Source: Klebsormidium nitens
Lineage: Eukaryota; Plantae; Klebsormidiophyceae
DNA: 64,000 nt
Reading direction: 5' to 3'
Assembly (NCBI GenBank): GCA_000708835.1
Contig: DF237285.1
Location: 37,252-101,251 of the forward strand
Shown piece by piece: positions 6,426 through 52,103 of the stretch. Within the stretch, counting starts at the first letter, position 1, and each line of letters opens with the position of its first letter. The notes below the pieces were generated by a model. The model saw only the letters and a list, made by a program, of their open reading frames with translations. It ran no database searches and had not been told where the DNA came from. A program made the translations under genes and the position numbers.

Positions 6426-9400
6426 ATGGTGCAGATCTGTGAATTGTATCCCCAATTGGCATTAAAGCGTCTGTATTCGTCTTCGTTGTTTCTTTGAGCT
6501 GTATGCAGTCTTCCTGCCCAATTTGCTCTACAATCTTTAGGTTTAAGCAATGCAGTAGTAATCCCAGCTTCCTGTTTTCTGCTTGTGTCTGCAGCTGATC
6601 GATGGCCCTTGGCAAGCAGTTTCTTCGAAGTCAAGCCAAGATGCAGCTCATTGTGCCTTGTTTTTGGCTGAAAGATTTCATCTTCATGGTCAAAACCTAG
6701 AAGCGTCTAATCCCCTTGAACAATACAGACCAGGTACACTTTTGTTGCTTTCCCTTGACCTGCTCCACTGACAGCCGTATTTCGATGCCCTACACGCTGG
6801 AGGAATACCAAGCCGCTCAGAGTTTTATGGTGATGAAGATGCAGCAGGAGAGCTCAACTTCGGAGGAGGGAGTGGAAGTTCTTGAAAACCGGCCGTTTGA
6901 AAATGAGGAGCTTGGGAAGGGGCAGTACACCCGAAAAGTGAGACTCTTGCAATGATGTTCCAGTATAGGGGCTGTGTTCCAAAGGCCAGTCACAGGTCTG
7001 CATCAAGCACCAGAGGTGCTCAGTGTACATTCGACTTCTTTGTGCTAGCGCCCTCAACCCATTTTCAAGATTTAGGGTTTTTTTGAAGATTGTTTTGTGC
7101 TTTCCTGGCAGATCTACCACTTTGCAAGCAAAGTCCCTGTGTGGCTGGCGGCGGTTGCACCGGCAGCTGTGCTCCAGATGGAGGAGGAGGCATGGAATGC
7201 ATACCCCCGATGCAGGACAATAATCAAGGTGCGCTGGATGGGGAAAACTTCAAGTTCTAACAGGAGGGGTACTGAGCTGGCTTTTGGTAATGTTGTCTAG
7301 AGTCAAGTAGTAGCTTTCAAACAAAGGTATACCTTTTCAGTGTGACAGGCTGCTTGCACGACTCCTTGTGGTGTTCTTAAAGTCAAGCGGGGCACAACCA
7401 CTGTTCACTGAAGCAAATTAGATTCTGAAGTGGGTAGAATGTTGATTATCTGTAATCTGAGCCACTGGCTGACCCGTTCAGCTGAGATTGAGAACCTCGC
7501 TCCAAGGCCTGAGCTTGATGCAGGAATGTCGCTGTTCTTCTGGTTGTCGACATGTAGAAGGTTGTAGAAGATGATTGGTCATCTACTCCTCCATGACACT
7601 ATCATCATATACTCCTTAAAACTCACTTTATAGTACAGAAAATTGCGGAGATAGCTTCATGATCACCCTCTTCGTCTCTGCTTGTCATTGTGCAGTGCCC
7701 TTACTTCACTTCCTTTAGCATCACCATCGAATCCAACCACGCGCCTGACCAAGGAACATCAGAAAACGTGAGCGTCTGCGTCACAGCTTGTGGTTCAAGT
7801 TCCTGAAGTACTGAAGGACTGCTTTTCAATCAATCGTAGCTTGTATTTGGATCAGCTGCTAAGGTCAGGGAAGTTCGTGAAGTCTTGGAGATGCTAAAAG
7901 ACTTCCAAGCAGTGAAGTCGATCAGAGTTTTTCAAAGTCAATACCAACACAGTCGCATGAAGGAGACGATATGTCGCCTTCAAGGCGACAAGCACTTGAC
8001 CATTCCGGGTGCCGTCAAGCGTGCGTTTATCAGTATTGCTTGTCTTTTTCTGTGCAGTTGCTCGACTTGAACGACCAGGACCTTAGCTTGCGGGTCATTG
8101 ACCACGTAGATATTGCTGCCCCTGCTCCTGCGGCCGATGCATGGTACGTGGAAGTGGGAAAGGACGAGCCATCCGAGTTTGTCTCGAAGAAAACCGGCAG
8201 GGGACCTCTTAATGAAGGTTGGCAGGTAAGAATCGCAACTCCACCCCAGATAGTACTTCGTGGTCCTTTTGTCATGAACTTCAGGGTCGGGAGGGAGTAT
8301 ATTGTCGAGTTGCAGGAGCGTCCTTGAAGTAGGTCAATTAGATTGTCGTATCGAGTCTTTCAACTCTTTTTGTGCATCTGCAGATGTTCAATTTCGATCA
8401 CAAAAACTTCAGGCTTGTGTTCGATTCGGGCGGAGCTTGAAGCGGTTCTGAATGCCTCCAAAATTGGCGTTATTTCTGCTGGTTGCATCAAGAAGCTGGA
8501 GACCAGCATCCTGGCCCTCGTTCTGAGACACCGTTACTGTTCGCAGAGAACCAGCGACCCCATCATGACAGCCTATAAACTTGTGAGAGTTGACGCCCCT
8601 ATATGGGCCATCGGATGGAAATTAGAGCAGGCGGTGATCCAGGTGAGACGTTCCATTGCGATCTTCGCCCTTCGACAATCGCTCTTTGCTAGCCCTCGCA
8701 AATTCCTTACGACATACGTAAAGGTTTATCTTTCAGGGAACGACCTTCCTTCAGCGTAGCGAATGCATGCAGACTGGGTCTTCGCATTGCATAGTGTTCG
8801 AAGTCACTGGACAGATGGCGACCGCAATTCAAGCAGAAAGAAGCATGTATTTCTCTTACACGATGATCTGCCCTTGTGGACGACGTACTGTGAACTGCGT
8901 GAGGCTGAGAATGGTCGATTGGTGGCGGTCGACTCGGCAATTGCATCAAAGAAAGAGGCTGGCTTTGCTTCAGAGGCAGAAAATCATCATTCATCGTTCG
9001 TACCGATCGTTCAAAACAACCACCACGCGAAGAGATCTTCATGTGAGGTTCCCAAAACGATCATCTAGTTGATCAAATTTGGACAAGGGTCTTCGCATTG
9101 GCCGGAAAAGCAGTTTTAAAGATGCTTCTGTCAACAACAAGCTCTTACCTTTTCCTTATCGCCTTTTCCCCGGTCTCTTCATTTTCTGCAGGCAGAGCGG
9201 GCCCTGTTTCTGGCGAGCCATAAACGGTCCTTCTGCTGGATGGACGACTGGCATGGGCTCACCATGGAGCAGCTGCGCAAGATGGAAAAGAAGAACGATC
9301 AAGAGCTCAACAAAGTGAGAGCCTTTCCGCAAGATCCAGTTGGTGACAAGATCCTGTTCGTGTCTTTGGATGGTAATCCGTTAGCTTCATTTGGCCCTCT

Positions 9401-10990: not shown

Positions 10991-12983
10991 ATGGAGCAAC
11001 CGCACCAAGGCAGACCAAGTTTGGAGGATGATGATGAGTGCCACGAGACGAATTTCGGTTTCGCAATCAACAAGAAGGAGTTTAGCGACCGCTTGCTGGA
11101 CCTCATTGCAACTTCAGGTGATTGATTTATCCTTAAGAAAACATTCCAGAAGGTCAACGAGAACTGCTCGAATGCATGAGATTATACTGAAGGCAGATTG
11201 AAACAATGCTCTCTCTTCTAGATTCGGGAGGCGCAATTGCTGTGCTTGTTCTATTGCATCATTGAAATTGATCATAATACATCTAAAATATTCAAACGTG
11301 AATATTTGTTCGATCAGACGCACCTCACAGCAACTTCCTTTGTCAAGTTGTCTGTCCGACAGCAAGGATCAGCCAAAAGATGCTCTGCTGCCATCATACT
11401 TACTTTCTCGCTGTTTTCATTGGTCAGCGAACGGTGATGAAGAGCATCTGAAGCTTCACGTGAACAGCGCCATCCTATCTGCCAAGAGCTCCTACTTCAG
11501 AGCTTTATTTGCGAGCACAACATCCGTCAACGTGGAAATTCGGGTTTCTCAAGAAGGTCGGTCATAGTCCCTTCTTTTGGATATGCGAGCATTAGCAGTA
11601 AGCAAATCCAAGGCCAAATATGTGTGGTGCTCTCTTCAATGCCGACCAGTGTGGGGTTCAATGTTGCTAAACCCTCAAAAGAAAGATAGAAGTTGCCTCT
11701 CTGCTTGGGGTCACCAGTATTTGCGGGTTTACAAGAGAGGTAGCTTTGAAGCAAGAGATGTGGCTTTGACGTCAAAAGTCCGTGTCAAGCATAGTTGCAG
11801 GCTAACTACTGGTCACTACGCATATATATGCCCGAGATTTTCGGCTTCTGAATCCCCTCTTGTCATTTCTGCAGACGAGGAGGCAGTAAGAGAGATGCTC
11901 TGGTTCTGCTACGATGAGAAACTTTGCCAGTGCATCATCAAAGGTCCCAAGGGTGTGGACTTTCTTCTCAAGGTGCTTCGAATTGGTCATCAGTTTCAGT
12001 GCAAGCAGGTGATGAGAAAAGGCCTTTCCGAGCTGCGAGGACTTCCGAAAACCTGCACCCTTGCTGACACAGTCTTGGCAAGTCTTAAGGAGACTCCGAA
12101 CAAAAATCTTCTTGAGTTTAAAGAAGTTCAAGAGCTCTTGAGGTACGTCCTTGACATCCTCTACTGGGAGTATGGAGACGCTTCGTCCTGGGGTTTGCCA
12201 GAGTTCAAGTCCCTCAGGCTCAGTTCTGTGAAAGCTCTTCTCGAGTCTGAACACTTACTAGCGAGTTCAGAAGAAGAGATCCTCGACGGGGTTCTAGCTT
12301 GGGTCAGGTCAGCTTACCGCACCGTGACTGACCGTAGGATTGCCATGCTCCAAGTAGCTGAGCACGTGCGCTTTGCAGTCATGAGTGGGGAATATCTTCA
12401 GACAATCCTGTCAGTGTCGGAGATGAAGCTGTGCCAGAAGGCCATCATGTCAGCAGTCTGGTACAGAGCCTTTTCAGAAACGAGGCGACTGGAAATGCAG
12501 AAAAAACCAGCTTCTGACCTGCAATACGGTGAAAGAAGCGGCGTTCTTCGAGGGCCCCGACATATTTTGCGGTCTTTTCAAAAGGAAGCAATGAAGGATC
12601 TTGTCCCTTTCGCTCGGCCTCTCATGACCGAGTGCGTCCAGATCAAGGAACACATCTTCATGATGTGCCCGCAAAGGTGCACAACAGAGGCAAATCCGGA
12701 CGGGTGTGCCGCAATACTGGTCAACTACTCTCGAATCTCTGAGGACGCGCCTCAACTGGAGATGCTGCTCATCACGCTTTATGCGAAAGCCTGGCCGGAG
12801 GGCGAGTGGCAAAAGCTTGGCACGTTGTCTCACGACGTCAAGGACCCGTCGGCAAGGAGAGTCTGCGTAGGCCGCTGCGACGTAAGCAAAGAAGCATGGA
12901 GCACCTTCATCAAATCGACCAAGTGGTTCGACAAAGACGGACAGCTTCATGTGCGTATCAGAATTCTGCCTTTCTTTAAGTAG
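10991..12983 (+). CDS. BTB/POZ + BACK domain protein (plant LRB/POB1-like group)
   Basis: Exon 1 MEQP...NFGFAINKKEFSDRLL; exon 2 ...LHVNSAILSAKSSYFRALF; long exon 3 from ~11879 with EEAVREMLWFCY, LKVLRIGHQF, LSSVKALLESEHLLASSEEEILDGVLAWV, HVRFAVM (BACK domain); stop at 12983. Confidence 0.85.
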
Positions 12984-13751
12984 CCTTCCTGTTGTTCGTG
13001 AACCTCTCCTCTAAGTCGATCAGGCATGATCAGACAGCCTGAACTTCGTGCCTGGACGAAGTTAAGAACCTTCAAGAAACTCGGCAACTATAGCTCTTTG
13101 GAAAAGCTAGACCAACTTAGAAAAAGAGAACTGATCTGCAGATTTTGATTAAGGAATTTGGGAGAGTAGTCGAGAACGAAGACATTACTAGTCGCAGGCA
13201 AAACTAGCGGCTTGGTCTGACATGCTCTTCACGCAGCAGGAGGTCCGCGTATATATTCACCAATGTCGATCCATTCTCCTACAGACCACATGCCAGCAGG
13301 CTTGCATTTTTCACCGAATTGCAGCACAGCGCTCGATCCTGATGGTCCTGATTCCTATATGCAATGCAGACTCTGCAATCAACGTCCGTTCGATTTTACT
13401 GGTACTCTCTTATATATAGCTTTAAGAACTTACCCCGCTAAGCATGAAAGGCATGACCATGTTTCTGTCTCTACAGAGCTCAAGTTGTGAGAGGAGTCTA
13501 TTTATAGGGGCATGTGCATTCCAGGTGCACTGAGCTCAAACTCACCAAGGCACGTGCACGAAAGCAGACCAGGCATGCATAAAGTACAGAGGGGCTCTCA
13601 AGTTTCTACCCTCATGCTGGATGTGAGAAAGTCTTCGCAAGAAAGGGGCTTGGACCAAGTTCGCGACAAGGTTCAGCTGATCAGTGCTGTTCATGTACTG
13701 CAAAAAAGTGTCCATAATGTATCGAAGGCTCCATCTATCTACAAGGAAACA

Positions 13752-16700
13752 TCAGGCCTCAATTCCCGACCCGGCCGCTGCCCGTTGGGCATGTTTCATA
13801 GCCAGCGCAAGCTGCAGCCTCGACCGCTCCCGGTGCAACTCCGAGACCCTCAGACCGAGCATCCCGTCATCGCCGTTCCGCACCGGCTCCATTTTGATTA
13901 GTTCTGTTTTGGGCTTGCCTGCCGCCGATACCGGAACCTCGCCACTGTCCACTCCCGGGTACCCTTCTCGCAAAAGCAGCCCGTCTTCTTGCAATCGCGG
14001 CCCCGCCCCGAAAGAACGTGCCGGCCTCAGCACGTTCCGTTCCCCAAATGGGCTCATACTTCTCGAGGCTCTCATCACCTTTCTCGACCGAACTTCCTTC
14101 CCCGGGGTGCTCGCCCCAACCACCCCGTCCTCGTGCCGCTTAGTGCCAACTTTGCCCGGCCCACCGCTTTCCGGATCCGTTCCGTTGGCCGCCCGGAGCT
14201 CCCGGAGCGCCTCCCGCTCCCGCTTCTCGCGCTTCCGGACGCGCCTGAGAACCGCGTTCGCGTCGTAACCGACTGGCCTGCGCTTGAGTACTGCCAGCGG
14301 GGCGTCAGCGACATTTTCGTTGCCGCTTATTGGTCGGTCCGGTTCCCGCTCCGCTCTGTTAGCGGAACCAGTCTGAACGGCCTCACCCCGTTTAGAATCT
14401 ACAACAAGCCTCGCTTGACCAACCCCCTCCCGACCAATCCCTGCCGCATCCCCGTTATCAACTCGCTGGAAAAGTCTCGTAACGCGGTTCTCCGTGCGCC
14501 ACACGTCGTTCCCTGCTTTCCCAGAGTTGACCTTCTGGCCCATCGGTTCCGGTCTTCCGCTCCCGTGTACTTCCACAGTGAGTTTTCCGTTTTCCGGTTC
14601 CGTTCCTCGCCGGCCTTCCTTCTGCACCATCCGTGACGGACCCCTTGCTCTTGGCCGCGGTCCCGCATCGCCGCCGGGCGGCCAACCAGCCTCTGCCACG
14701 TGGCGGAGGGACGGCTCATCGCCCAGGATGGCAATGACCTCAGCGATGCTGTCCCCTGCGGTTGCGCCGCTCGCCGGGCTTCCGGCATCCGCTCCGTTCC
14801 GATCCCGTTCCCTTCTGCCGAGCTCCGTCGTTGATCCTGGCGGACTCGCCACTTCCTTTAACACGTCCAAACCGCGCCGAGTATTGCGTCCGGCATCGCT
14901 ATCAGGCCCCCCAGTACCGACCGTCGTCAGAGATAGTTGTTCGGATGGGAAGCTATCTGGCGGCAAGTCCGCAGACTGGGCTTCCGTCTTCACAGCCAAT
15001 AGGCGGTTGGCTGCCGCCGCTTTACTAGCAACAAACGAAGGGTGCCGACCAGCAAGGCTTGGTTCTGGAGAAGAAGACTTGTCCACTACTGTAAGATAGT
15101 GGGGCGAACATTGCATTGAGCGACTTTCGCTCGGTTGCGCGTCAGGGACTCCGGCCACAGCTCGCTGCGCAACGCGTCCTTCTTCAACAGGGACTCTTTC
15201 CTTCCGGATCTCATCCTCTGGCCTTCCGACCGATTGCACCTCATCCCAACTCGCCTTCCCAGACGGACTCTCTCCTTCCTTGTCTCGGGTCGGTTCAACG
15301 AAGGACGCGCTAACCGTGTCCTCTGGGTTCTCAATGGTCTCCCACAGAGTCCCCTCTTCCTTCTCCAATTTCTCTGACTTCCCCGCTTCGAACGACCCAA
15401 GTGGGACCGTTTCTCGAGGGGCTGACGTGGCACCCACGTGGCCCTGCACCGAATGAACCGACTCCGCTACGCTCTCCAAGGGGCCGCCACTCACACTCTC
15501 AACCTGGAGCCCGTTCACACCTCCCGACAGCCCACTCGTACTCTCCTCCCCGACCCAGTGGACAGCCTCTTCTCGGTGCCCATCCGCACTCATACCCGAC
15601 AGCCCGTTCACACTTTCGTCACCGGACGCATTCTCACACTCGTCTTTTTGCCCCTGTGCCTGCTCTATGCTCCTCAGCAGCAATTCAGACTCCCGCTCAA
15701 TTGCGTCCCAGTCAGAGCGCTCCCCGGCCTTGTCTATCGCAGGCGATGACGTCATTCCTCCCGCAACTGTGTTCCCTTCGATTTGAGGTTCTCGCCCTGC
15801 CTCCGCGTTCGAACCCGTCACTTCCGCCGTTTCTTCCGCCGCCCTCTCTGGCAGCCCCTTCAGCTCTGGCTCCGTTTCCATTTGCGTCAGTAACGTTGTG
15901 ATACTGACGTCCCCTCTCCCGTTTCTGACGTCATCCTTCCGGTCAGTGGACGTCTCCTCATCCCGCCCAGAGAGCGCTTCGTCTGAGGCCCCGTCAGCGT
16001 CGCCCCTTCGCGACGACCGCCCCCCTCTGTTAACCGCCTCAACGTCCTCTCTTATAACCTGCCCCCGAAACGACCGCTTCTCAGCTTCCAAGTCTACCCC
16101 CTCGTTCTTGCGCCCCCCCGCTGCAACCCAGCTTCTTTCATCCCCCCCTTTAGGGGCCGTTTGCCTGAGCAGCCGCCTGCTGACGTCAAGCTCCTCCCGG
16201 GCCGTCAGCAACTCCTCCCGCAATTCCCGGAAGGCTTCCGCCTGCGTCGCCAGGCGGGTCTTCCCATCCTCGATCTCCGCCCGCAGATCCCGGAAGAGGT
16301 CCTCCTGCCTGGCGAACAGACTCCGCCCCGCCAAGAGCTTCTCTTCGAGCTGCGCCAGACGCTGCCGGCTGGCCTCGACTTCGGTCCACGCTTTCTGGGC
16401 GTCCAATTGTGCAGCGGACAGCTGTTCGCGAAGGGGATCGTTGGAGGGCTCTGTCTGATTGGCGGCTGTGTCGTGTGCCGAGGGCTCAACGGAGATGGAG
16501 AAGTGACCTGCACGAGCAATCAAGATAAGCAGATGTTTGTGCACGGACATATCTAGGCGTAGACACAACCGGGTGTACACAAGCTTTTAAAAGAGCTCTG
16601 CTTTTCAAAAGCAAATCTCCATACGTTGTTCGTTTACGACCAGCGTGAACTGCTTGTTAGGCACACGATGTGGAAAAGAGTAGATTGCGAATCCTGTCGT

Positions 16701-40053: not shown

Positions 40054-43000
40054 TCACAAGTCGAACTTGTCTGACGACGTGGGAAAATCGTAGTCCATGT
40101 CTTTCAGCGGATCAATACCCGGCTTCTTTCCCGCTTGCGACTCCGTCCACGTTTTCGCGATCGTCTTCTTCATCTCGTCATCCCCTTCGTCGTACAGCGT
40201 CTGCAATCAAGGAAGAGGTGAACGTACATGACCAAATTGGCGATTGGAATAAGATAAACCAATAAGCTGATTGGCCTGCGAGGGTAATATGCACTCCTTA
40301 ACAGCCCTCAGGCCGTGAGTCTTTTGGATTGCACTCAACACGAGTATGAATGACACTTTCCGAACGAATCGCAGAAGGTCCCCGTAAGCGACTCCTGTGG
40401 GTGTCCAACAAAAACTGTTACGGTCAAGTTCCTCATGAGTCATTCTCGTGACGGCCTTAACATTGCCTTTGGGAATCGGAGACTTCCAAGGTCCACAGAA
40501 AGTCCACAGAAGGCCTCAACACAGAAGGCTTGAGAACAGAGAGGGAAGCCCGGGAGAAGGACCAGGTGCCCAGACTCACTTTCATCAGGTCCATGATCCC
40601 GGCCATCGGATTGTCCTTCGAAGCAGCGGTGTCCTTCTTGTCGAACTGCGAAGAAGTAAGCATGGGCTCAGATTGGCGAACCGGTACTTCCAATCAAGGT
40701 GGGCACAACGTTGTGAAAGCAGATTCGCACTGCTCGAGACCATTCGCACTTCGCCGTTTGATGTCCCACGGCTGCAGATGTCGGACAAACTTCGGCGCTC
40801 TTTGGCTGTGCTGCGCATTCCCAGGGAATGATAAATAAAGTAGCTGCAACAAAGGGCTCAACTGCGTCTTCGTTCGGGGTGGGCATCAAACGTCGATCTT
40901 CAACGAAAAGGACGAAAAGGCACCCTTCCTTAGTGTTACGGCGGTCACATGGTCGGAGGAAGCGCAACGGAACATGATCATCAAGTTCGCTGCCAACCTC
41001 TGTTCCTTGTCCGGGACGCAAGAAGCACGATCAGTGGGGTTTGAGTGTTATGCCACGCAAAGGCCTTGTCGATCTGCTCTTTGCAAGCCGACCGTCCCGG
41101 GTCAGCAACTTTTTCCTTCGCGGGAATCGATGAATTGTCCTCACTGCTCAGAGGAAGTTACAAAAGCAACAACCCGCAGAGAAAACATGTACGCGAAAAA
41201 GTCGGCACGACAGCAGACGACAACCCGGTCCACGTCTGATTCGCAGTCTTCCTCTTACTTGCTATTAGTAAAAGCCCTCAACACGAAGCCGCACAACCGT
41301 CAGTCGGGAACCTGAAGATCCGCCTCCGAACAGCTGCTCAGACCATCATAAACTCGTCGGCCAGGCAACGATACTGATAAAACGTTCCCCACCTCACCTT
41401 GCTCTCTTTATGGTACAGGTCCAGCCAGTGCTTCCGCTCCGCCTTGGGCATCGTAATCGTGATACGCTTCGGTTTCACCGCCACACTAGATCTCTTAGGG
41501 TCGATCTTGCCGTGGAGTTGGTGGACTGCCGCCCGAAAGTGCTTGCCCGCCACGTCCTGCAGCCGGACGTCGAATGATGTCGGTGTGAAGTCAGCGATGA
41601 CGCGGTCCTGCGACGCACCCTCGATGAAGATGTAGATCTGCAGATATGGTGACTTCTTCAGAATCTTAAGAATGACAGCAAAGATCTCGCAGGGATGTTG
41701 GGACAGTTTGAACAATATGAAATCTGGACAATGCGGCCCTACGACGCTCCCTCAATGGAAAATAAGATCTGCGAACCCATGAGGAATTTCAATGCGGGGT
41801 CCAATCTGTTTCACGTTTTTCCTTTCAAAGGTTTAAGAAATCTCGAACGAGCCCGGCGGAAACGTCAACACACCCAGATCTATGACGCGGTCTCAATGAA
41901 GACATAAATATGGACAAGCAGATGTACAAAGGGTTACGTGACCGTTTTCCCCCGCCTTCGGGGACATCGTTCGCAAAGGTTTTCTCGGTATAAGAGGAGA
42001 TGTTTTCAGCTTTTTTGGAGCTGTCATAAGAGACATAGAGTCCTCAACGAGAGAAAAGAGGAAAACGCTCCTTTCGGCAGCCTTTACTTCGTTGTCCGTC
42101 TTCTGTCCTGGCGTCTTTTGCTGGGGACTTGTGTTAAAACGTGTGCTCCTTCTGAAAGGGGTGCGGGCGAGACTCAGATATAAAAACACAGAGAAGCGAG
42201 AGTTGAGTCAGTGAGGAACCAGGATCAACCAGGCTCAATCCCAGAAAAGATGTGGGATAGTAAGGGGCCAGATAGATGAGAATTGACAATCTTCGTCGAA
42301 TTGGTTCGAATATCTCGCTAGACCTTTGTACAGATTCACTTAGAGATAAGGGAGTCTGTAAAAGGTTGCTGCCAAACAGGACGGTACTGACCATTCAAAC
42401 GCGAACTAGCATAAACACTGATTTGAATCATTGTCTCTACTGAAGCATTTGAATGACCATTTGAGCCCATCACCAACTGTCATGCACGATTTCAGTCCAA
42501 CGTTAAACTTACGAATCACTTCACGTTTCTCCGTGAACTTCAAAACGTGTTCAAGATATCAAATGCCGAACCCGCGCACCTGCCTGCAACCTTTACTTCC
42601 GTTTTCTCTAATTCCATCTACTTGATACTTGCCAATCTGGTCTAATGACCATATAAGATGCAATTCGCAAAATTGAGTACATACCTTGACTTTGTCGGAG
42701 TCCTGGTCCCAGCTGAGAGTCGAGAGCGTTGTGTAGTCTATCCGCGGCACCGAAGGCTTCACTGCGACGGGCTTTATCTTGATTCCATCAGACTTGTCCT
42801 TTTTCTCTGGTCCCTACACAGATCAAAGCGCCACACCAACAAGTCAATTGTGGTACTGTGATTCCTGTCAACGTAAGAGCTGGCTGATTGCTCAGAATAA
42901 CTGCGGCGATCAACCATGATTCTTGCATCCTAGAAGGAATGAACGCACATTTATACGCGAACTTCAAAGAGCACTGGGATTAAATACCATAAAAAGCAGT

Positions 43001-43948
43001 TGATAAGCTCAGATGAGGTGAGTCCAAGAGATTGCAAGACTGGTCTAAATGAAGGTTCGGTATCAAGAACAGGTTGCACTCACAGATGCGAGGAGGTATG
43101 CCAGGGACGATGATGTTAGCATAAAAATACTGCCCCTCAAATCTTGCTCTCAAGATGACTCTCAACTAATATTGGGCTTTGATTGCCACCGTCCTTTCAA
43201 TTACGAGGAAATGATCGCAGATCTCTAGGTGAGGCAGACTGTGGAAGGGTCACTCTGCCAATTGCAAGGCGCTCCTATCATGGTCTGACCACCAGCCAAC
43301 AGCCAATTGAAACAAGGATTTGATTTCAATTTGAGAAACTCAAAGGAAAACATGGAGGAACAGTCAGAACGACGACTCAAAAGTTGACCCTGGATCAGGC
43401 TTTCCAACTATGACTGTCAGTGAGTAACTTGAACTAAAAAGGTTTGAAAGGAGCGTTTCAATTTATGTGCAATGAATGCTGAGCAACATAGATTTATCAA
43501 TTAAAACCTGCTTGTGTTGGCGACAAAAAGAGGATAGACTTCCAGGAGAGACAAAACTCTCTACATACGGGGTCCTTTGTTCTAAAAGATGCACAATACC
43601 ATCCTGCTTAAGAGTGCTAAGGGTTTATGGCGGTTTGATAATAGATAGTTGATCTCTGATGCCGACAAACATCGCAAGGCTCGTTGATTGTTTGAAATGT
43701 TCTCCTAGATGGTGGTGAGTAAGCCAACAAATATGCTTTGCAAAATGAAGTACACGGTGGCACTATTGCAAGGGATAGCACAATTGGACCAATTGCAGAA
43801 GATTTTATTGTCAGCGCCACCTTTTCAATCTCCTGCAGCTCCTTCTCCAGCAAGCATTTCACGGCCGCTGGCATTCCGCGAGCAAGCGCTTGAGCTCCTC
43901 GATGTCGGCTTTGAGATCTTCCGTATCCCCGTTTGTTGCAGCCATCAT
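40054..43948 (-). CDS. CACYBP: Calcyclin-binding protein / Siah-interacting protein (Siah-binding N-terminus, CS domain, SGS domain); apparent frameshift in exon 1
   Basis: Exons: MMAAT...DLKADIEELKRLL / VKCLLEKELQEIEK; YTTLSTLSWDQDSDKVK; IYIFIEG...GKIDPKRSSVAVKPKRITITMPK...HWLDL; DNPMAGIMDLMK; TLYDEGDDEMKKTIAKTW...DKFDL* (TGA at 40054-40056). Confidence 0.88.
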
Positions 43949-44811
43949 GGCTGACCTCCTGCCCTGCTAGGACTTTCTGAATTAGGCGCACAGATGGGCG
44001 CAGATTTTGGGCTTAGAGCTCAGTACTTTGAAGTTTGACACTGACAGACTCGGAGCTCTCGACTCTCGAGCTCAGGACTTGTTCGCGCGCGAGAACGCGA
44101 ACAGTGAAAACCAATCGCTGGGGCGGCCGCCGAGCGTCCAAGTGAGGCCGACGTCACGATCCTGAGGTTCGACGGCGATGCCTTTGGAAAAGACGGGGTC
44201 GTTGATGCGGGTCGATGTCGCCCACAGATTGTTGTTCAGATTTTTTGATGAGGCCTAGTTGTGCGTTCCACGAAAGCCACAGGATCCGCTTAATGGGCGG
44301 CTCAAATCTCGTCTGAGCAAAACTGGACGCTCCAGATTGATTCTAGCGGATCGTATTCTTATCTTCGAAGACGAAACCGTCGAAGTGGGAGTTCCACTCC
44401 GGAAACTCGAGAGCGCTCAGCAAAAGGAGCGAGAGAGAAAGGGGACGCGTTCGGAGGAGGAAGAAGGGCCAAACTGCGGGCGTCACGGGATTCAAATTTG
44501 AATTCTAGGGTTCCATTGTTTGGTCAGCTGCGCGTTTGGTGCCTGCCCTAGCTGCAGCTGTTGGGCCCTTCTTGTGTGGCCCATGGGGGCTTCGCGTGTT
44601 TGAGAAGGTGCATACCCAGGTCATTTAATATGCATTGAAACTCTGGTAAGTGAACGCAGACTTGGTTACAGTGTGCCGAATTACGGCGGTGATCAGAACA
44701 CATATTGCAGCTAGTTTTTCCCAGGACATGGGGTATAGGTTGCTCTAGCTTACGAGGTTAAGCACACGGAATTTGGATCCTGTGAGTTTGTCCACACATT
44801 CAGCACCTCAA

Positions 44812-47800
44812 ATGGAGGGCCCCCCTCACTTCCACCACATGCCCTCCCCGTATGGCATGGTTGCTGAGCACGGTCATGGGATGCAAGCCCCCCATGGACT
44901 GCAGCAGTATCACCAGGTACCGCATCACCCTGAGCAAGGGGGGGCGCACCCTGAGGGGCACTTGCAGGCTCAGGCGCATGCTTATAATCCTGGACAGCAA
45001 GGCCATCATCAGGAAGGCCAGGTGCCGGGCTCAGGACTGGACCCAGGGCAGGAATATCAGGATGGGAGCCTGTACTCGGCCGTTGTGGAGGCTGGGATGG
45101 AAAAGGTGAGTGCCTGATGGATAACCAGACCTAGGATTGGGGGAGGTGTATAATGCGATTGAAGACTGGTCTTCAAGGGCGGTGGGAAGTGCAGATGGCT
45201 GGCTCAACGTGTATTTGAGGCTTCACCACCTTTACCAGGATTCCACCCACTCGTATCCAGGTAGCTTTGCTACTCACGAGCCTGTGTCAGACTGAGTGTA
45301 CTTAAAAGAGTGTATATAAGCATTGTGAGGAGCAGATAGCTGATAGGTTGTCTGCTAATGGCAGTGAAATGGCTTTTAGAAAACCATGGTTCTTTGAGAT
45401 AGTCTTGTTATACAAGAAAATGCTTTTGTAGTCCTTGGCGTTTGCTGAAAAAGGCGTGTCACTCCTACCGCTATCACTAGCGTGCTGGCTTGAGTGAGTT
45501 GTCTGCTTTCTCATGTATTTTTGAAGCCGCACAAATCCGATCTCTTGACCAGCTTCGTCGAGATAGAACATCAGTTCTTTTGTCAGCCGCTTTTGCTGGC
45601 CCTTTTTGACATAGCCTTTTACCTCTGCTTGAATAGGTGGCTGATCTCTTAGTTCTTTCCTGTTGACCAACACATCTGCAAGTTGTCAGAAGTACCGAGT
45701 CTTTTCAGCAATGCAACATCCTTGGACGATTCTCACCCGTACGGTGCAGTTCTGAACCTTTTGCGGAAGGCGCTCACCTTCTCGTCCCCACTCTCTCGAT
45801 GAGATGAAGCCAACGACGTCCTCTGAATCCCAACCATATTTTTAGCCAAGGTAAAGTACACCTTAAAACCAGTGTTCACCAATCATTACAGGCACCTGCC
45901 GAAGATGTTGATGACGAGCTTTTGGCCCGCGTTGAGGTCAGCGAGCTGACCGACGCCCAGATCCGGACACGTTTGAAGCTGCTAACCGCTGAGGCGCAGA
46001 AGCGGGGAGTCCAGGTGGATGACTGGCTCCCTGGGGTGCACCCCCCCCCGCTAAGCGATGCGGAGCAACTCAAGGTGGAGAAGGCGCGCAATGCCAAGGC
46101 GGAACGGCGTTTGGGGCGCATCTTCGAGGGGCTGGTCAAGGAAGTGGGGGGATATGGCTGGATCTATGGGTTCATCACCGCTTCAGGTGGGGGGGGGGAC
46201 TTGGTGCTGGGGTTTAGAAGATTCTCCCATCAATTGCTGAAAGCAGAAGTCCTCTGTATTTTGGAGGAAGTTGTACATCGGGTTTGTGTATCCAGTGTTT
46301 CAGGTATTAGCGCCGTGGCAGAAGAGCTCTGTACACTTGTGATGGGGCAATCGACGTTTGTTATGGGTTTTGAGTTCACTTTTTGTCATGTGGGGGGTAG
46401 CAACTAGGTGCGCTCTGGTGAAATGTTTTGTAGAGTCTACGCAATCGAGACTATGCTTAGTCGCAGGTACGATAAAGAGTACTTAGGACGTTGTGAGAGG
46501 AGGGCGTGCAGAAGTTTGCATCACTTTAAGAAGTGGCTACTAATACAGAAAGCAAGGATGCTCATCAGAACGGCGAAAGGTGCCTGAGTCTTAATGATGA
46601 AGCATCCGGGTGTCTTTTCTTTTGGGACAACTTTCTTATATTATTCAATTTTTCTTCTGACAAGGTTCTTAGCTTGTTTGCGTCTGCGCGATTGTACGTT
46701 GCTCAACTTCCGTCTCAACAAGAGCACTGCAATTGCTTCTTGTACAAAGCGTAGGGGGCTTCGCACGTTTCTCCTGCTCCAAAAACCTGATCATGTAATC
46801 TGAGGAGCATCTCACTCATCTTGCGCCCCTATTCTCACAGGCCAGCCCAAGTCGGGCGCGAGCGAGAGCATGCGCAAGTGGTGGCTCGAGCAAGTCCGCT
46901 TCAACGAGGTCGCGTGCCCCGACCGCAAAGCTCCGCTCAATGCGGCCCGCCTCCCCAAGACCGCAAACCTCTCCGACTGTGACGGGAAGTCACCGCAGCA
47001 GTTGATGATCAAGCTGACGCACCGGCAGCTGGCGTCGATGGCGTCCGAGTGGCTGCGGTTGTGCGAGCCCTCGGCGGCGCAGTACCCGCTGAACGGGTCA
47101 GGGGGATCCCCCCCTTGGTGGCCGGAGAACATCCAGTACAAGAAGCCGGACCTGCTGAAGAACCAGGCGCTGACAGAGGTGGGGGAAGCGCAATGAGTAT
47201 GTTGCATGAGACTTGTACGGCTGTAAATAGGCTATTGTCCAGAGAGTGTGAAGGTTTGAGAGTAATTGAGAGCTGCTGGTCAACTGGGACAGGTCTTTTC
47301 TCTACTCTTGAATATGCAGTACTTGTTTTGGCAATCTGGTTTTGTTTCTTCCTTATCATCTTTAAGGCTTGGGACCATCTCCTCAGGTTTCCGGGGCTGA
47401 CCAAGCTGGATGTCACAGATTGATAAGATCAAATTTGAGATGGCAGACACTTGACTTTGATGGCTTCCGATTGCATTTTGATTGCACATCCGGTCCTGCA
47501 GATTTCCCGCTTGAGGATCTCTGTAGCGAGTAACTGTATCCAATTCTATCTCGGTCTCTTCACTGGGGCCATAACAAGTTTGTATTATCGAGACTCCGAA
47601 GTTGCGCCCTAACCGACGCTCAAACCCTTTTCTTGACCCTTACAGGTCCTGGAGCTGGGCCTCAAGAACTTCTTGCCCAACATGTTTGCGACTGACGCCT
47701 CGGAGGTGCTGATCAAGATCCTGATCCGGTCCAAGGTCCTGCGGAAGGCAGGGGCTGCCGAGATCGCCATTGTGGTCAAGGTCATCAACACTGCCGTTGC

Positions 47801-48990
47801 GCTTTGGGCCAAGCCGGATCCTCGTGAGTGTCCCTTTCTCGCACTTATCCTTGCTTCCAAATTCTTCAAAATCGGTTGATCTTTTTCCCCTCCTGTGTTT
47901 TAGGGTCCTTTGCGTCCTGAACGCTTTCTCAATCTCTTTGCGCTCGAGGTGTGGTGGTGTCAATTTTGTCTTGTATCTTGAGGTGTGACAATCATCTACC
48001 CAGGTGAAGTTGATAGGTCTCTGGAGGGTTTAACCGGGGTAAGGACTCACTCGAATATCTCCAGGCAGTCATTCGTTCCCTCAACCTCGAGGGATGGTGG
48101 CGTATAGAGCTGCGATCTTGCAACATGTTGCAGAAGACGAGTTCGAACCAGATCAGAACCCTTTTGGATTCAAGATAGAAGTAACAGAAGACCAAAGAAC
48201 CTGTGCGATTGTCACCAGAAATCCGGACGATTGGAGGGTTGCCCACCCCGGTATATTGTAGAGGGGAGATCCAGTTTTGTCCACTCGTTGCCGACTGCTC
48301 GACTTGTTCTCTTTTCACTAGAAATGCTTCAGGACCGTAGCGCATCTTGATATGCAATGTGAAGCTTGACGGGGATGCTTTCTGGCGTGCAGCGAGGAGA
48401 GCAGCCGCCCCTGGTCAAGCGGGGGGGCGGCGAGGCCGGCCGAAGAGAAGCGAGGGGGGGACCAACTACTCTGGGCTGTTGGCAGGTAAGAAAGGGGCAA
48501 TACCAGGCAGTGTTCGCTGTCCGTGATTGCTCCTGCCCAGCAGGAAGTCTGTTCTTTGCGTCCTCCAACATGCGTTGTCAATCATCGATATCCGTGTTCT
48601 GAACAACACAGGAGATAGAAAATCGATTCCTGATTCGTTTCAGTCTGAATCATTCTCTCTCCACCAGGCGTTGACGGCTCGGGCTTCAAGCGGAAGCGGC
48701 GCAAGCGCGAGGAGATCGAGGAGCGGCCGTTCAAGTGCGAACTGTGCGACCACCCGGGGTACACGTCCCGGGGGGGCTTGTCCGACCACAAGTGCACGTC
48801 CGGCGTCCGGATGGATCACATGCAGGACGGCGGCCTGGGGGGGGCTCAGATTGTGGTCCCCGTGGCGTCACAAATGGGGGGGCAGATGGTGGGGCAAGGG
48901 ATGGATCCGGGAATGGATCATCCGGCGATGGGGTATCACCACGAGGACACAGCGATAGGCCAGATGCATGGGCATGGCATGCCGTCATGA
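44812..48990 (+). CDS. EIN3: EIN3/EIL-like transcription factor with additional AT-hook, NLS and zinc finger; 6 coding exons
   Basis: Exons ~44812-45105 (H/Q/G-rich), ~45893-46190 (GYGWIYGFIT), ~46841-47181 (SGASESMRKWWLEQVRF...LCEP...YPL...SPPWWP...YKKPDLLK), ~47646-47822 (LIRSKVL), 48393-48485 (RRGRPKR) and 48669-48990 (KRKRRKR...ERPFKCELCDHPGYTSRGGLSDHKC). The central block matches EIN3 motifs GFVYGII / GASDNLREWWK..VRF / CDPPQR.FPL..G.PPPWWP / YKKPHDLKK / VRQSK.L. Confidence 0.8.
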
Positions 48991-50142
48991 CACGACTTAC
49001 TACAGCGCTTTGATGCAATGAACAATTTCGAAGTGGTGCAAAATGACGGCGCACATGCTAGGTTGCATGGTAGGACTACTGTTGTTGCATTATGATAAGT
49101 AGGTCTAGGTTAGTGTACAATAAAAAAATGTTCTGGCGGATGGTCGATATGATTAAAGTAGACTCGGAAATGCTTTGCAAAATGAAAGTTGATGTCGCTT
49201 CGATGTACTGACGAGTATCGTGTCAAATGCAATTGTAAGCATCTCAGGCTGGATGGCGCCAGTTTAGTGTTCTCTGGATTGTGGTCTCTCATGGTTCTTT
49301 TTGGCCATGACAAAAGTTTTCCGGTTTTACTGTATAGTCTGTAGGCTTGACGCGCATGTAAAGATGGCGAGTATCCAAGTCCAGCGTCCAGTACACGATC
49401 GGAGGTGTGCTTTCATCTGACAATGTCCGCTCGAGTTTCAGTTGTTGTTCTAGAACAGTCACACAGCTCGCGCCAATCCCTACATGGACTCACCGTGGCC
49501 CCGGCTCATGTGCATATACCTATACAGAGATCGATACGATAGTAATTCTAGCTCGAGTCCCACCTGCATCATAGTGCAGACCGTCCCATGGCCCCGCGCC
49601 GGCGACCAACGATCATGCAACCAATTACGGCCGCGCACATGTGCTCTTAATCCGATTTACATGGCCGCCATGCATGGTCTGGCACTCACTGTGCCGGATC
49701 ATGCAGCTCCTCGAGCCACCGTCGAACATACATGATGTAAGGCGGCCGCGCCTACGACCCCAGGCCTGAGGCTTCATGGCAGCTGTGCATCCCAGGCCTG
49801 CGGCAGGACAATTGCTGCTATCCATGCGCAGTAATATACGAAGAAGGGCTCAAGCGCTCATGGTTCTGAACACTTGAAAGTTGGAGAAGCGCTTGACAGC
49901 ACTCAGACGTCATTCTTTTGACTAGGTGGATGAATCCTACAAGCTCTAAGGCTAGCTACGCTCTTTCAGCGACCAATCGACCTTTTGCCCACAAGCAGGC
50001 GACAGCAACCTTTCCCTATTCTAATTTTCACAGCGAGCTAAAGGCTAAAACTCTGCAACGGGTTACTCCTTGGTGCTCAGACCAAGTGTACATTGCAAGC
50101 AATTCGGAGCGCAAGTGCGTGCTGATACGACGACGTATCAGT

Positions 50143-52103
50143 TCAAGCCGTTCCCCAGAAGATGCCGAGCGCAATACCCTGGAGGGAAACAGCGCGCACT
50201 TCATCAGTTGCTTCCATTGAGAATTCCCATGTGTTCTTGAAAGGCCGAAGAGCTGCGGCTTCCAATAATGTGGGAGACCTCGGCAGAAAGCCCATTACTG
50301 GAGGTGGACTACAAACCAGAACTCCATGAAGTAGCAATAGAAAAGCGCACCTGAAAAAAGCGATGGATCGCCGAAGCGCGGGCGACTTACTGTCTTTGAA
50401 AGAGTCGCGATTACCTAAACCCAGTTTTTAAAAGGGTAACAAGCTCCCCGAAGGCGTTCACAATGAGCCTGAGCTACAGCCCTTTCAGTCCACACGGTCA
50501 AGGTGAGGAGTGTTCCTTATTGCTATGGCGTCCAAAAAGCAAGTAAGTCTTTTCTCTATGACTTTGGCAGAGCAGGTCAAACAAATCCACTTCACGACCT
50601 CAGCGAAGCACGAGGCAACACGCTCTCTTTGATGACGTCAAGGAGAGGTTCACCAGCTATCTCAGCGACTTTTCCGTAGCTCGAACGCTGGGCTTCATGC
50701 CCAATGACGTCACCAACACCAGAAAGAACCTGTCCCCCATTACGTCGGCACAAAAGAGTCACCCGCAAACAGACTCACCCACTGCTTGAGTGGAATCTCT
50801 TGAACTTGAGGCTGGCCTTCTTGCCGGTGCTCTTCGAATGACGTCAACAAAGAAGAAAAAAGGTTTTCCCATAACGTCAGCGAACTCACCCACTGCTCGA
50901 GCGGGTTCTTCTTGGGTTTCAGGCTGGGCTTCTTGCCGGTGATCTTGACGAAGTCCTCGATGATCTCGCGCTTGGTCAGCGAGACCGTCAGCCGTGGCCG
51001 CTTGAGCGGCTCCGGCTTGTCTCCCTCCTCGCGCTCCGCCGCGCGCCGCGTGCGCTTGCGCCTCTGCCGCGCCTCCGCCTCCAACTCCTCGTCCGAGTCC
51101 CTGAGAGACATGTGAAAAAGATCAATAAGATCCTGATGAAGATTAGAGAGTGTTGAGATAAAAGAGAGTATTGAAATGATAGCAAAAACGCTTTGGAACG
51201 ACGGTGGTTGAGTGCCGCGCCTCCGCCTCCAACTCCTCGTTCGAGTCCCTGAGAAAACGATGGGACGGATTGAGTCAAAAGTCAGTTCAGACTTGGATAC
51301 TGTTGAGATGAAAGGACAGGATGCGAGACAGAGTGAAGCTAGAGCGACCCTCGGACGTTATGGACCAGAAAAAGGAATGATACGGAAGAAAATACGATCC
51401 TAAACGATTGTGTGGCGTACCTCCGCCTTAGACTGCGTCTGAGCCCCTGGGCACAGGTTTTTCAAAGCACACCAGGTGACAGCTTACAATAAGGAGAACG
51501 TTATTGAAATTTTGAGTCCGTTTCAAAAGCTGTTGTTCCTGCTTTGTGACGCAATGTGCTTCTTCGCCCTGTAGCTCCTCAAAGGAAGCCCTGCGAAAAT
51601 CAGCCCGACCGTCTGGACGTTCGGATTCTGGTCAGAAATGGCGGAGCTTAATGACATCTGGAGCTGATAACGAACTTCGAGGCCACGTTTGGTGTGATGC
51701 GATTTGAAGGGCTTCAGATCCGCTCAGATCTAGGAACGTTTGGACCTCTGTTCCTCTCACATCGTGCATCCAATGCGATCCGATAGGCGGGGAAAGCAAG
51801 CACCAGCTTAGCGATATCTGGCTTCAGATCGACGTGCTTCAACTTTTGCAAGAGGCCTTTAAGACAGTTCTGCTCACACCACTACAACCCACTCACCTCT
51901 CTTTCGGCGTCCTTTTTACGGCGGGCCTCTTGCCCTTCTTCTTCTTCTGTTGCGCGGCTTTGATCTTATTCCGCGCCCCGCTGGCGCGCGCGGCCCCTCT
52001 CCTCGAAGGCGGCCTGCTGGGGGTCGCCTCCCGCTCCTCCTCGGGGGGCGTGGGCGAGTCTGAGTCAGCGCCGGCGCGGTGGTTGCGGCCGCGCTTTCTT
52101 ATC
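50143..52103 (-). CDS. 3' exons of a protein with a DUF1639-like C-terminal motif (last exon and start uncertain)
   Basis: Phase-compatible exons 52103-51897 (basic/acidic low complexity) and 51100-50891 (PRLTVSLTKREIIEDFVKITGKKPSLKPKK, similar to the DUF1639 pattern SLSKEEIEEDF..M.G.KP..RPKKR). Confidence 0.6.
50770..51450 (-). repeat. Intronic echoes of both ends of the DUF1639-like exon
   Basis: Acceptor-end copies at ~51215-51253 and ~51418-51450 (gactcg.acgaggagttggaggcggagg); donor-end copy at ~50771-50836 (actcacccactgcttgag...cttgccggtg versus the true 50884-50940). Confidence 0.75.

What the first reader, a model, noticed from the sequence alone, without database searches (positions are those of the whole stretch)
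44812..48990. EIN3/EIL-like factor with an AT-hook and C2H2-like zinc finger: an unusual architecture for the ethylene master regulator family
The central exons carry recognisable but divergent EIN3 DNA-binding-domain motifs. Splicing at GT-AG sites in matching phase appends RRGRPKR (AT-hook core RGRP), KRKRRKR (NLS) and ERPFKCELCDHPGYTSRGGLSDHKC (C-x2-C-x13-H-x-C, preceded by a linker like (G)EKPF). Angiosperm EIN3/EIL proteins as I know them lack these modules and have an essentially intronless CDS; this gene has five introns. It may represent an ancestral or lineage-specific EIN3 with three DNA-binding modes, informative for how ethylene signalling was assembled before land plants.
Basis: partly seen in the sequence, partly recalled or inferred. 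Interest (0 to 1): 0.78.

Follow-up and report, generated by a model that had tools for sequence, protein, structure and literature searches.

The report
Divergent EIN3-like factor with AT-hook, finger
This alga expresses a gene whose protein joins a very divergent version of the DNA-binding domain of the plant ethylene regulator EIN3 to two extra small DNA-binding motifs; the combination is real and conserved, but nothing yet shows that it works in ethylene signalling.

Summary
The six-exon GT-AG model (44812-48990, +; 506 codons) is confirmed exactly by spliced transcript contigs from four studies; two of the contigs each span all six exons. Exon 3 alone passes Pfam's EIN3_DNA-bd threshold (51 bits against 27). 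Orthologous loci from three other samples of one related alga (dS about 1.3, dN/dS 0.13) keep all six exons. The AT-hook core GRRGRPKRSE is identical there, and the basic stretch plus finger segment is almost invariant. The basic-stretch-plus-finger module also follows the EIN3-like domain in two paralogous lineages, one of them K. nitens GAQ79417.1, annotated 'Ethylene insensitive 3 family protein'. None of 197 canonical EIN3/EIL proteins I fetched has it.

The gene lies in a small, very divergent clade, seen only in the K. nitens assembly and in unlabelled samples carrying near-orthologues of this gene. It is separated by a long branch from all canonical (land-plant) EIN3/EIL. Two of its relatives sit beside KDZ-type transposase genes. 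The finger is a C2H2 derivative that lacks the classical last histidine. No Pfam finger model accepts it, and zinc and DNA binding are untested. An ethylene role is unshown. I could not retrieve the locus the literature calls the K. nitens EIN3 (Kfl00014_0150). Searches of the joined protein were left out.

Earlier notes of this scan had already found EIN3-like genes elsewhere in this genome.

The parts
44431..44811 (+). 5' UTR, with three short upstream ORFs (ATG at 44583, 44630 and 44728; 6, 2 and 6 codons)
   Evidence: Transcript contigs begin at 44431-44466. The upstream ORFs were listed.
44812..45105 (+). Exon 1: start codon and a 98-residue low-complexity head rich in G, H, Q and P
   Evidence: Translation; joint 45105|45892; composition. 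It is 60% identical in the orthologue. No Pfam match.
45892..46186 (+). Exon 2: acidic and helical N-terminal part of the EIN3-type region, ending in GYGWIYGFITAS (canonical ARGFVYGIIPE)
   Evidence: It lines up in the same order with canonical EIN3 (hhalign E 0.016). It is 80% identical in the orthologue.
46841..47178 (+). Exon 3: core of the EIN3-type DNA-binding domain, including PPWWP (47110-47124) and YKKPDLLKN (47137-47163)
   Evidence: PF04873 51.4 bits (cut-off 27) and PF11001 35.4 bits (cut-off 31.3). Match to EIL3 structure 1WIJ, E 0.002. 90% identical in the orthologue.
47646..47823 (+). Exon 4: last helices of the EIN3-type domain (IRSKVLRKAGAAEIAIVVKVINTAVALW)
   Evidence: In the alignment it falls opposite the canonical SKCLQDKMTAKES..W region and the same part of the paralogues. 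On its own the match is not significant. 85% identical in the orthologue.
48393..48485 (+). Exon 5: AT-hook exon, with core RRGRPKR at 48428-48448
   Evidence: Joints 47823|48393 and 48485|48668 in four runs. GRRGRPKRSE is identical in three orthologous loci while the rest of the exon diverges.
48668..48990 (+). Exon 6: basic stretch KRKRRKR (48688-48708), C2H2-derived finger FKCELCDHPGYTSRGGLSDHKC (48730-48795), a tail rich in G, M, Q and H, and the stop codon
   Evidence: Nearly invariant in the orthologues up to HMQD. Homologous module in GAQ79417.1 and in locus L004. Its matches among solved structures are C2H2 finger proteins.
48991..49249 (+). 3' UTR
   Evidence: Transcript contigs end at 49243-49249.

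Best explanation
This is an expressed, conserved cellular gene, in the alga that earlier notes of this scan name as Klebsormidium nitens. It encodes a 506-residue, transcription-factor-like protein of a small and very divergent branch of the EIN3/EIL domain family.

Shown:
- The transcript and its splicing.
- The EIN3-type domain, encoded by exons 2 to 4.
- A strictly conserved AT-hook core in exon 5.
- A basic stretch and a C2H2-derived finger in exon 6. The same module also follows the EIN3-like domain in two paralogous lineages.
- Purifying selection on all of these parts.

Inferred mechanism:
- The basic stretch carries the protein into the nucleus.
- The helical EIN3-type domain reads a specific site.
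- The AT-hook (minor groove of A/T-rich DNA) and the single finger with its basic lead-in add contacts beside that site. This would lengthen or change the recognised sequence, much as GAGA factor combines one finger with basic regions (from memory).
- The head and tail, rich in H, Q, G and M, act as disordered activation or interaction regions.

I take it to be a lineage-specific relative of EIN3, not a proven ethylene regulator.
For: - Spliced contigs from four studies; two contigs each span all six exons.
- Exon 3 scores 51.4 bits on PF04873 against a cut-off of 27.
- Exons 2, 3 and 4 each line up in order with canonical EIN3 and with the paralogues.
- A model of paralogue P0003 matches the AtEIN3 DNA-binding-domain crystal structure 4ZDS (TM 0.74 by target length, rmsd 2.1 A).
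- Orthologous loci L001, L085 and L088 keep all six exons. Summed dN/dS is 0.13 at dS 1.27. GRRGRPKRSE is 10/10 identical, and the stretch from GSGFKRKRRKREEI to HMQD differs at only four or five positions.
- The upstream neighbour (a CS-domain / Siah-interacting gene) is syntenic in L001 and L088.
- The basic stretch plus finger also follows the EIN3-like domain in GAQ79417.1 and in L004.
- phmmer of the 57-residue finger segment against solved structures returned 76 matches at E up to 10. All 60 listed are C2H2 finger proteins (single-finger chains such as Aiolos at 1.3e-4).
- In the language-model search restricted to named clusters, all ten best hits that carry a family share a family or clan with the best one, C2H2-type fingers. 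The tool notes that a third of shuffled proteins do the same.
Against: - No Pfam finger model reaches threshold for the window, its orthologue or the paralogue.
- The spacing is C-x2-C-x13-H-x-C and the classical last histidine is missing.
- AlphaFold on three sequences gave pLDDT 50. It showed only the expected hairpin and no helix.
- The fold test was done on a paralogue, not on this protein, and its alignment contained canonical EIN3 rows.
- Exons 2 and 4 alone do not match EIN3 significantly.
- The basic cluster around the AtEIN3 K245 position is weakened: YKKPDLLKN against YKKPHDLKK.
- No DNA-binding, localisation or ethylene data exist.
Confidence: 0.65

Rival explanations
1. It is the alga's true EIN3 orthologue (or co-orthologue), perhaps the locus cited as Kfl00014_0150. 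It acts at the end of an ethylene pathway, and the AT-hook and finger are ancestral or lineage-specific additions to the master regulator.
For: - It passes the EIN3 Pfam threshold.
- Its exon 3 is closer to canonical EIN3 (26-33% identity) than paralogue P0003 is (18-26%).
- An alga's orthologue is expected to fall outside land-plant sequences, and every named canonical sequence I had is a land plant.
- The literature places the origin of EIN3/EIL at the ancestor of Klebsormidium and later streptophytes (PMC7027972) and names one K. nitens EIN3, Kfl00014_0150 (PMC4594257). I could not retrieve that locus.
Against: - The branch separating it from the canonical clade is very long: 1.41 + 2.2 changes per column.
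- It lacks the canonical insert between PPWWP and YKKP.
- K. nitens has 'no definite counterpart' of EIN2 (PMC4594257), so the canonical relay to EIN3 cannot be complete.
- Earlier first-reader notes place a gene they call EIN3 on another piece of this genome (unchecked).
Confidence: 0.2
2. It descends from, or still serves, a KDZ-type DNA transposon. The family would be the DNA-binding accessory gene of such elements, and this copy is a domesticated or stranded one whose role concerns the element rather than host transcription.
For: - GAQ79417.1 lies 1.3 kb from a convergent gene with the CxC4 domain PF18717. Its EIN3-like part is intronless and has a frame break.
- The P0003 locus has a homologue of that same gene in the same relative position.
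Against: - No homologue of that transposase-like gene exists anywhere in the 64-kb window, nor in L001 or L004 (tblastx).
- This gene has five introns and a syntenic neighbour in related algae.
- It is transcribed in four studies, and dN/dS is 0.13.
- The direction of transfer (host gene captured, or element gene domesticated) cannot be read from an unrooted tree.
Confidence: 0.1
3. The C-terminal motifs are not DNA-binding modules. RRGRPKR and KRKRRKR together would form only a bipartite nuclear import signal. The finger would be a decayed relic, or a protein-binding knuckle that holds no zinc.
For: - The fourth classical ligand is missing.
- Pfam finger models fail.
- The model of exon 6 has low confidence.
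- The stretch before the finger looks like the worn helix and linker of a lost preceding finger (alignment to CTCF).
Against: - A relic would not stay invariant at dS 1.27.
- Cys, Cys, His and His are invariant across three paralogous lineages.
- The AT-hook core matches the consensus R-G-R-P with basic flanks exactly.
Confidence: 0.05

Closest known systems
Arabidopsis EIN3/EIL1/EIL3 (Pfam PF04873; structures 4ZDS and 1WIJ)
   Same: The helical DNA-binding domain is homologous: GxxYGxI, SGASxxxRxWW, the PPWWP motif with the Pro216 position, YKKP, and the closing helices all occur in the same order. The fold is confirmed for a paralogue.
   Different: - Identity in the core is only 26-33%.
- The roughly 16-residue insert between PPWWP and YKKP is absent.
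- The basic cluster around K245 is weaker.
- An AT-hook, a basic stretch and a finger are added. None of 197 canonical proteins fetched has a finger-like pattern, and only one has an RGRP, elsewhere in the protein.
- The gene has five introns.
- The link to ethylene is untested.
K. nitens GAQ79417.1, 'Ethylene insensitive 3 family protein' (P0005), and unnamed algal proteins P0002, P0003, P0006 and P0086
   Same: They form one clade with this gene (96% SH-aLRT; 88/99). All lack the canonical insert. GAQ79417.1 and the P0002 locus have the same basic stretch plus RPFKC...G[YF]...GL..H finger after the domain.
   Different: - Their EIN3-like part is intronless.
- Two of them sit beside a KDZ-type (CxC4) gene.
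- Their finger ends in the classical H-x4-H, where this gene has H-K-C.
- They lack the conserved AT-hook exon. GAQ79417.1 has an RGRP upstream of the domain, but P0086 does not keep it.
Fungal YDR124W-like helical bundle proteins (Pfam PF11001)
   Same: Exon 3 also passes this family's threshold (35.4 bits against 31.3). Fungal-looking members were hit directly by exon 3 (P0070 and P0076).
   Different: Only the second half of the domain matches. One of them, P0070, carries a fungal Zn2Cys6-type cysteine cluster at its N-terminus. No AT-hook or C2H2-type finger was seen.
Classical C2H2 fingers (CTCF, Ikaros/Aiolos) and single-finger factors with basic flanks such as GAGA factor (the latter from memory)
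   Same: It has an ERPFKC lead-in like the TGEKPF linker, C-x2-C, an aromatic residue, x5, Leu, x2, His, and a basic region directly before a lone finger.
   Different: There is one extra residue between the second Cys and the aromatic residue. The last His is replaced by a Cys two residues after the first His. No Pfam model accepts it.
AT-hook proteins (HMGA, plant AHL)
   Same: The core R-G-R-P is flanked by Arg and Lys-Arg, as in HMGA-type hooks (from memory), and it is strictly conserved.
   Different: There is a single hook and no PPC/DUF296 domain. No binding data exist.

Membership tests
EIN3/EIL (PF04873) | Match to the EIN3_DNA-bd profile above Pfam's gathering score | tested here: met
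   Exon 3 alone scores 51.4 bits against a cut-off of 27, on profile positions 83-174 of 252.
EIN3/EIL (PF04873) | PPWWP motif with the Pro216 position (PMC4564277) | tested here: met
   SPPWWP at 47107-47124, invariant in the orthologues.
EIN3/EIL (PF04873) | Basic cluster YKKPHDLKKAWK holding Lys245 (the ein3-3 site, PMC4564277) | tested here: inconclusive
   The window reads YKKPDLLKNQ. Depending on a one-residue gap, either the K244 or the K245 position keeps Lys. Without the gap, the K245 position is Asn.
EIN3/EIL (PF04873) | Conserved stretch TGxExWW...PPP between PPWWP and YKKP | tested here: not met
   Absent in the window, its orthologues and P0002, P0003 and P0006. Present in 11 of the 12 canonical rows and shortened in one.
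EIN3/EIL (PF04873) | Fold of the solved EIN3/EIL3 DNA-binding domain | tested here: inconclusive
   Tested only on paralogue P0003: 4ZDS, TM 0.74 by target length, rmsd 2.1 A. Folding the joined window protein was left out.
EIN3/EIL (PF04873) | Groups inside the canonical EIN3/EIL clade | tested here: not met
   It sits on the other side of a 96% SH-aLRT split. Each of exons 2, 3 and 4, placed separately, does the same (88/99). No charophyte canonical sequence was in the tree, so orthology is not excluded.
EIN3/EIL (PF04873) | Acts in ethylene signalling, with EBF-dependent turnover | not testable with these tools
   There are no functional data. K. nitens is reported to lack a clear EIN2 (PMC4594257).
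C2H2 zinc finger (PF00096 and kin) | Spacing C-x2-4-C-x12-H-x3-5-H | tested here: not met
   The window has C-x2-C-x13-H-x-C. The paralogues have C-x4-C-x14-H-x4-H.
C2H2 zinc finger (PF00096 and kin) | Pfam finger model above threshold | tested here: not met
   The only match is zf-H2C2_2 at 13.2 bits against a cut-off of 40. There is none for the orthologue or for GAQ79417.1.
C2H2 zinc finger (PF00096 and kin) | Sequence similarity to solved C2H2 fingers | tested here: met
   All 60 listed of 76 phmmer matches are C2H2 finger proteins. CTCF reaches 5e-8 (summed over its fingers), Aiolos 1.3e-4, HIC2 5e-4.
C2H2 zinc finger (PF00096 and kin) | Beta-hairpin plus helix fold, and zinc binding | tested here: inconclusive
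   The AlphaFold model has pLDDT 50. It shows strands at residues 20-22 and 29-31 of exon 6, where the hairpin should be, but no helix. Zinc binding cannot be tested here.
AT-hook | Core R-G-R-P flanked by basic residues | tested here: met
   RRGRPKR at 48428-48448. GRRGRPKRSE is identical in L001, L085 and L088. Pfam reported no AT_hook match; that model is very short.
AT-hook | Binds the minor groove of A/T-rich DNA | not testable with these tools
   This needs EMSA or footprinting.
KDZ-transposon accessory gene | Lies beside a KDZ-type (CxC4) transposase gene inside one element | tested here: not met
   tblastx with the L002 CxC4 gene finds a homologue in L003 but none in the 64-kb window, L001 or L004. 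The neighbours here are CS-domain and DUF1639 genes.

The most novel reading that the evidence does not exclude
The EIN3 DNA-binding domain entered or spread in streptophytes through a gene that also carried a C2H2 finger and travelled with KDZ-type transposons. On this reading, the window gene is the cellular form closest to the ancestor of plant EIN3/EIL, and the AT-hook and finger module was lost before land plants arose. That would tie the origin of the ethylene master regulator to a mobile-element DNA-binding protein, with older relatives in fungi (PF11001) and animals (NRF1).
Probability: 0.15. Interest if true: 0.85.

Novelty: new variant of a known kind. Interest (0 to 1): 0.55.

Why it matters
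EIN3/EIL is held to have arisen in the common ancestor of Klebsormidium and later streptophytes (PMC7027972). That conclusion rests on the Klebsormidium genes.

This work shows that at least two Klebsormidium genes that pass the EIN3 profile belong to a very divergent clade. These are the window gene and GAQ79417.1, which is annotated 'Ethylene insensitive 3 family protein'. The clade has a different architecture (a finger, and here an AT-hook as well), and some members lie beside transposase genes.

Claims that Klebsormidium 'has EIN3' therefore need checking gene by gene. The gene also offers a natural case for testing how an EIN3-type domain works together with two small DNA-binding motifs.

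I found no paper describing this fusion.

Tried and rejected
1. **Word-based protein searches.**
   - A search with a clade alignment, and one with GAQ79417.1 residues 105-345, found only GAQ79417.1 and one fragment. Low-complexity words filled the candidate list.
   - The third search, with a canonical EIN3, was swamped by angiosperms: 1916 hits, 120 shown, none from Klebsormidium.
2. **Metagenome scan.** A scan with a canonical EIN3 alignment, meant to find a canonical copy in the Klebsormidium-like alga, returned 80 land-plant-like loci only.
3. **Exact look-ups.** The four ATG-started exon ORFs of the window are not in the protein collection.
4. **The literature's K. nitens EIN3.**
   - Kfl00014_0150 (PMC4594257) could not be fetched, and no supplement text of Hori et al. 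2014 is held.
   - From the accession range, GAQ79417.1 on DF236979.1 is probably on the 30th scaffold, so it is probably not Kfl00014. This is inference.
5. **Pfam on neighbours.** ORFs next to P0002 and P0003 gave no match.
6. **Structure of exon 6.** AlphaFold gave low confidence.
7. **Earlier findings by sequence.** These searches came back blank.

Rejected readings:
- Exons 5 and 6 belong to another gene or frame. Single contigs span all the exons, so this is refuted.
- RGRP is a chance occurrence. A rough estimate puts it at about 1.5% per protein of this size, and it is conserved 10/10.
Full report
**1. The observation**

The exons are 44812-45105, 45892-46186, 46841-47178, 47646-47823, 48393-48485 and 48668-48990.

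- Every intron is GT..AG and the phases match.
- The exons total 1521 nt: 506 codons and a stop.
- An in-frame stop lies just upstream of the ATG at 44812.

I then laid the contigs of four public runs from four studies on 44300-49400.

- All five joints are present exactly where predicted.
- Two single contigs (2150 and 2120 nt) run through all six exons, from 44442 to 49249.
- The runs are only guessed to be RNA. But they hold the spliced form at high depth and the introns at a few percent of it, which is what transcripts look like.

**2. The EIN3 part**

I scanned exon by exon.

- Exon 3 (112 residues) scores 51.4 bits on Pfam EIN3_DNA-bd against a cut-off of 27.
- Exon 3 also scores 35.4 bits on the fungal YDR124W-like family PF11001, against 31.3.
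- It matches the solved EIL3 domain 1WIJ at E 0.002.
- Exons 2 and 4 are not significant alone. In a joint alignment, however, they fall at the expected places in the expected order: GYGWIYGFITAS opposite ARGFVYGIIPE, and IRSKVLRKAGAAEIAIVV opposite QSKCLQDKMTAKES.
- The PPWWP motif is kept.
- The conserved stretch between PPWWP and YKKP is absent.
- The basic cluster around the AtEIN3 K245 position reads YKKPDLLKN.

**3. Relatives**

I ran a full HMMER search of 1.84 billion representative proteins with exon 3. It found 85 proteins:

- fragments of an orthologue (89-91% identity);
- a small group, P0002, P0003, P0005 and P0006 (35-38% identity);
- about 75 canonical EIN3/EIL proteins (E 1e-6 to 1e-3);
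- two fungal-looking PF11001 proteins;
- a few repeat artefacts.

P0005 is GAQ79417.1, 'Ethylene insensitive 3 family protein [Klebsormidium nitens]'.

Trees separate the window lineage plus this group from all canonical sequences.

- With exon 3 the split has 96% SH-aLRT.
- With exons 2, 3 and 4 placed as separate rows, all three land on the same side, at 88/99.
- The branch between the two sides is very long.

Two cautions apply. The tree is unrooted. Every canonical protein whose origin I could name is a land plant, and an algal orthologue would fall outside land plants anyway. The window's exon 3 is nearer to canonical EIN3 (26-33%) than P0003 is (18-26%).

**4. The orthologue and selection**

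Three loci come from two JGI metagenomes and one set of Logan runs: L001, L088 and L085. They are one lineage of a related alga and carry the same six exons.

- The introns are unalignable.
- The upstream CS-domain / Siah-interacting gene is syntenic.
- Per-exon codon counts give dN 0.169 and dS 1.27.

| Exon | Amino-acid identity |
|---|---|
| 1 | 60% |
| 2 | 80% |
| 3 | 90% |
| 4 | 85% |
| 5 | 59% |
| 6 | 69% |

- In exon 5, GRRGRPKRSE is identical while the rest of the exon diverges and has an indel.
- In exon 6, the stretch from GSGFKRKRRKREEI to HMQD differs at only four or five positions, two of them between the two cysteines. The tail then diverges freely.

These motifs are therefore under strong constraint.

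**5. The finger**

The same module follows the EIN3-like domain in GAQ79417.1 and about 1 kb after the P0002 ORF in L004.

- GAQ79417.1: RRKRRRRCDITEYPFKCTAAGCEGHRGFVSAGGLANHRRANH.
- L004: RQKRRRACDISNRPFKCPHPDCSAHAGYTNKSGLDKHTRKKH.
- None was found after P0003.

Shared by all lineages that have the module:

- a basic run;
- [RY]PFKC;
- a second Cys;
- a His one to three residues later;
- G-[YF];
- G-L;
- a further His.

The paralogues end with the classical H-x4-H. The window lineage has H-K-C instead.

Other tests of the finger:

- phmmer of the 57-residue segment against solved structures returned 76 matches at E up to 10. All 60 listed are C2H2 finger proteins.
- The alignment to CTCF shows one extra residue before the aromatic position. 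It also shows that KRKRRKREEIEERPF lies opposite the helix and TGEKP linker of a preceding finger.
- The language-model search restricted to named clusters also returns C2H2 families, but at weak feature counts.
- No Pfam finger model passes.
- A three-sequence AlphaFold model is unreliable (pLDDT 50) and shows only the hairpin.

I therefore call it a C2H2-derived finger with an altered last ligand. Zinc binding is inferred.

**6. Is the architecture unusual?**

One has RGRP, in another context, and none has both. I found no paper on such a fusion. Multi-exon EIN3 genes in algae are already reported (PMC9136324).

**7. Transposon link**

- GAQ79417.1's EIN3-like part is one intronless stretch with a frame break near L002:10714-10728.
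- A convergent gene with the KDZ-type CxC4 domain lies 1.3 kb downstream of it.
- The P0003 locus has a homologue of that gene in the same arrangement.
- The window, L001 and L004 have none.

It makes a transposon origin, or capture by a transposon, a live question for the family. The window gene itself behaves as a stable cellular gene.

**8. Fold**

A model of P0003, built on a 23-row alignment that included canonical rows, has high confidence over residues 190-320. Its best solved match is AtEIN3 4ZDS (probability 1.00, TM 0.74 by target length, rmsd 2.1 A). NRF1 8K4L is far weaker. This tests the clade, not the window protein.

**9. What stays open**

- The literature names Kfl00014_0150 as the K. 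nitens EIN3 and reports no clear EIN2 (PMC4594257). I could not fetch that protein. I also could not find a canonical EIN3 from Klebsormidium, or establish whether the window gene is annotated.
- The organism name rests on earlier notes of this scan. It is consistent with the paralogue's record in GCA_000708835.1.

**10. Verdict**

This is a real, expressed and conserved gene. It encodes a new domain architecture within a divergent, apparently Klebsormidium-restricted branch of the EIN3 family. Its role in ethylene signalling, and the function of the two added motifs, are inference.

Noticed in passing
L002:10001-19312 (K. nitens DF236979.1): The public model of GAQ79417.1 appears to splice around a frame break in an otherwise intronless EIN3-like ORF. 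The gene faces a CxC4-domain (KDZ-type) gene. The pair recurs in L003 (EIN3-like gene at 5664-6731, KDZ-like gene at 11805-16337).
   Followed up: partly
L004:11313-12155: About 1 kb downstream of the P0002 ORF, a separate ORF starts with a basic run and a finger homologous to the window's. P0002 is therefore probably a truncated gene call for a protein with an EIN3-like domain plus finger.
   Followed up: partly
window 44583-44748: There are three very short upstream ORFs (6, 2 and 6 codons) in the 5' UTR of the gene.
   Followed up: no
window 47794-48422: Low-depth contigs (about 2% of exon depth) run from exon 4 into intron 4. Read through, that form stops at 47879 and would lack the AT-hook, the basic stretch and the finger. 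It is probably unspliced precursor RNA.
   Followed up: no
P0070, P0076 (hits): These are fungal-looking proteins with the PF11001 helical bundle. P0070 carries a Zn2Cys6-type cysteine cluster at its N-terminus. Exon 3 hits them directly, which links plant EIN3 and the fungal family at sequence level.
   Followed up: no
model of P0003: The NRF1 homodimer-DNA structure 8K4L appears as a weak structural match (probability 0.66). This echoes earlier notes that link the NRF1 and EIN3 folds.
   Followed up: no
window 41338-43954 (-) and 50740-51111 (-): The neighbours are ordinary cellular genes. Upstream is a CS-domain / Siah-interacting-protein-like gene, syntenic in L001 and L088. Downstream is a DUF1639 gene.
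   Followed up: partly
window 46187-46198, 46036-46046, 48425-48431 and others: Runs of 7 to 11 G or C occur in and beside the exons of this gene, for example the G run that starts intron 2.
   Followed up: no
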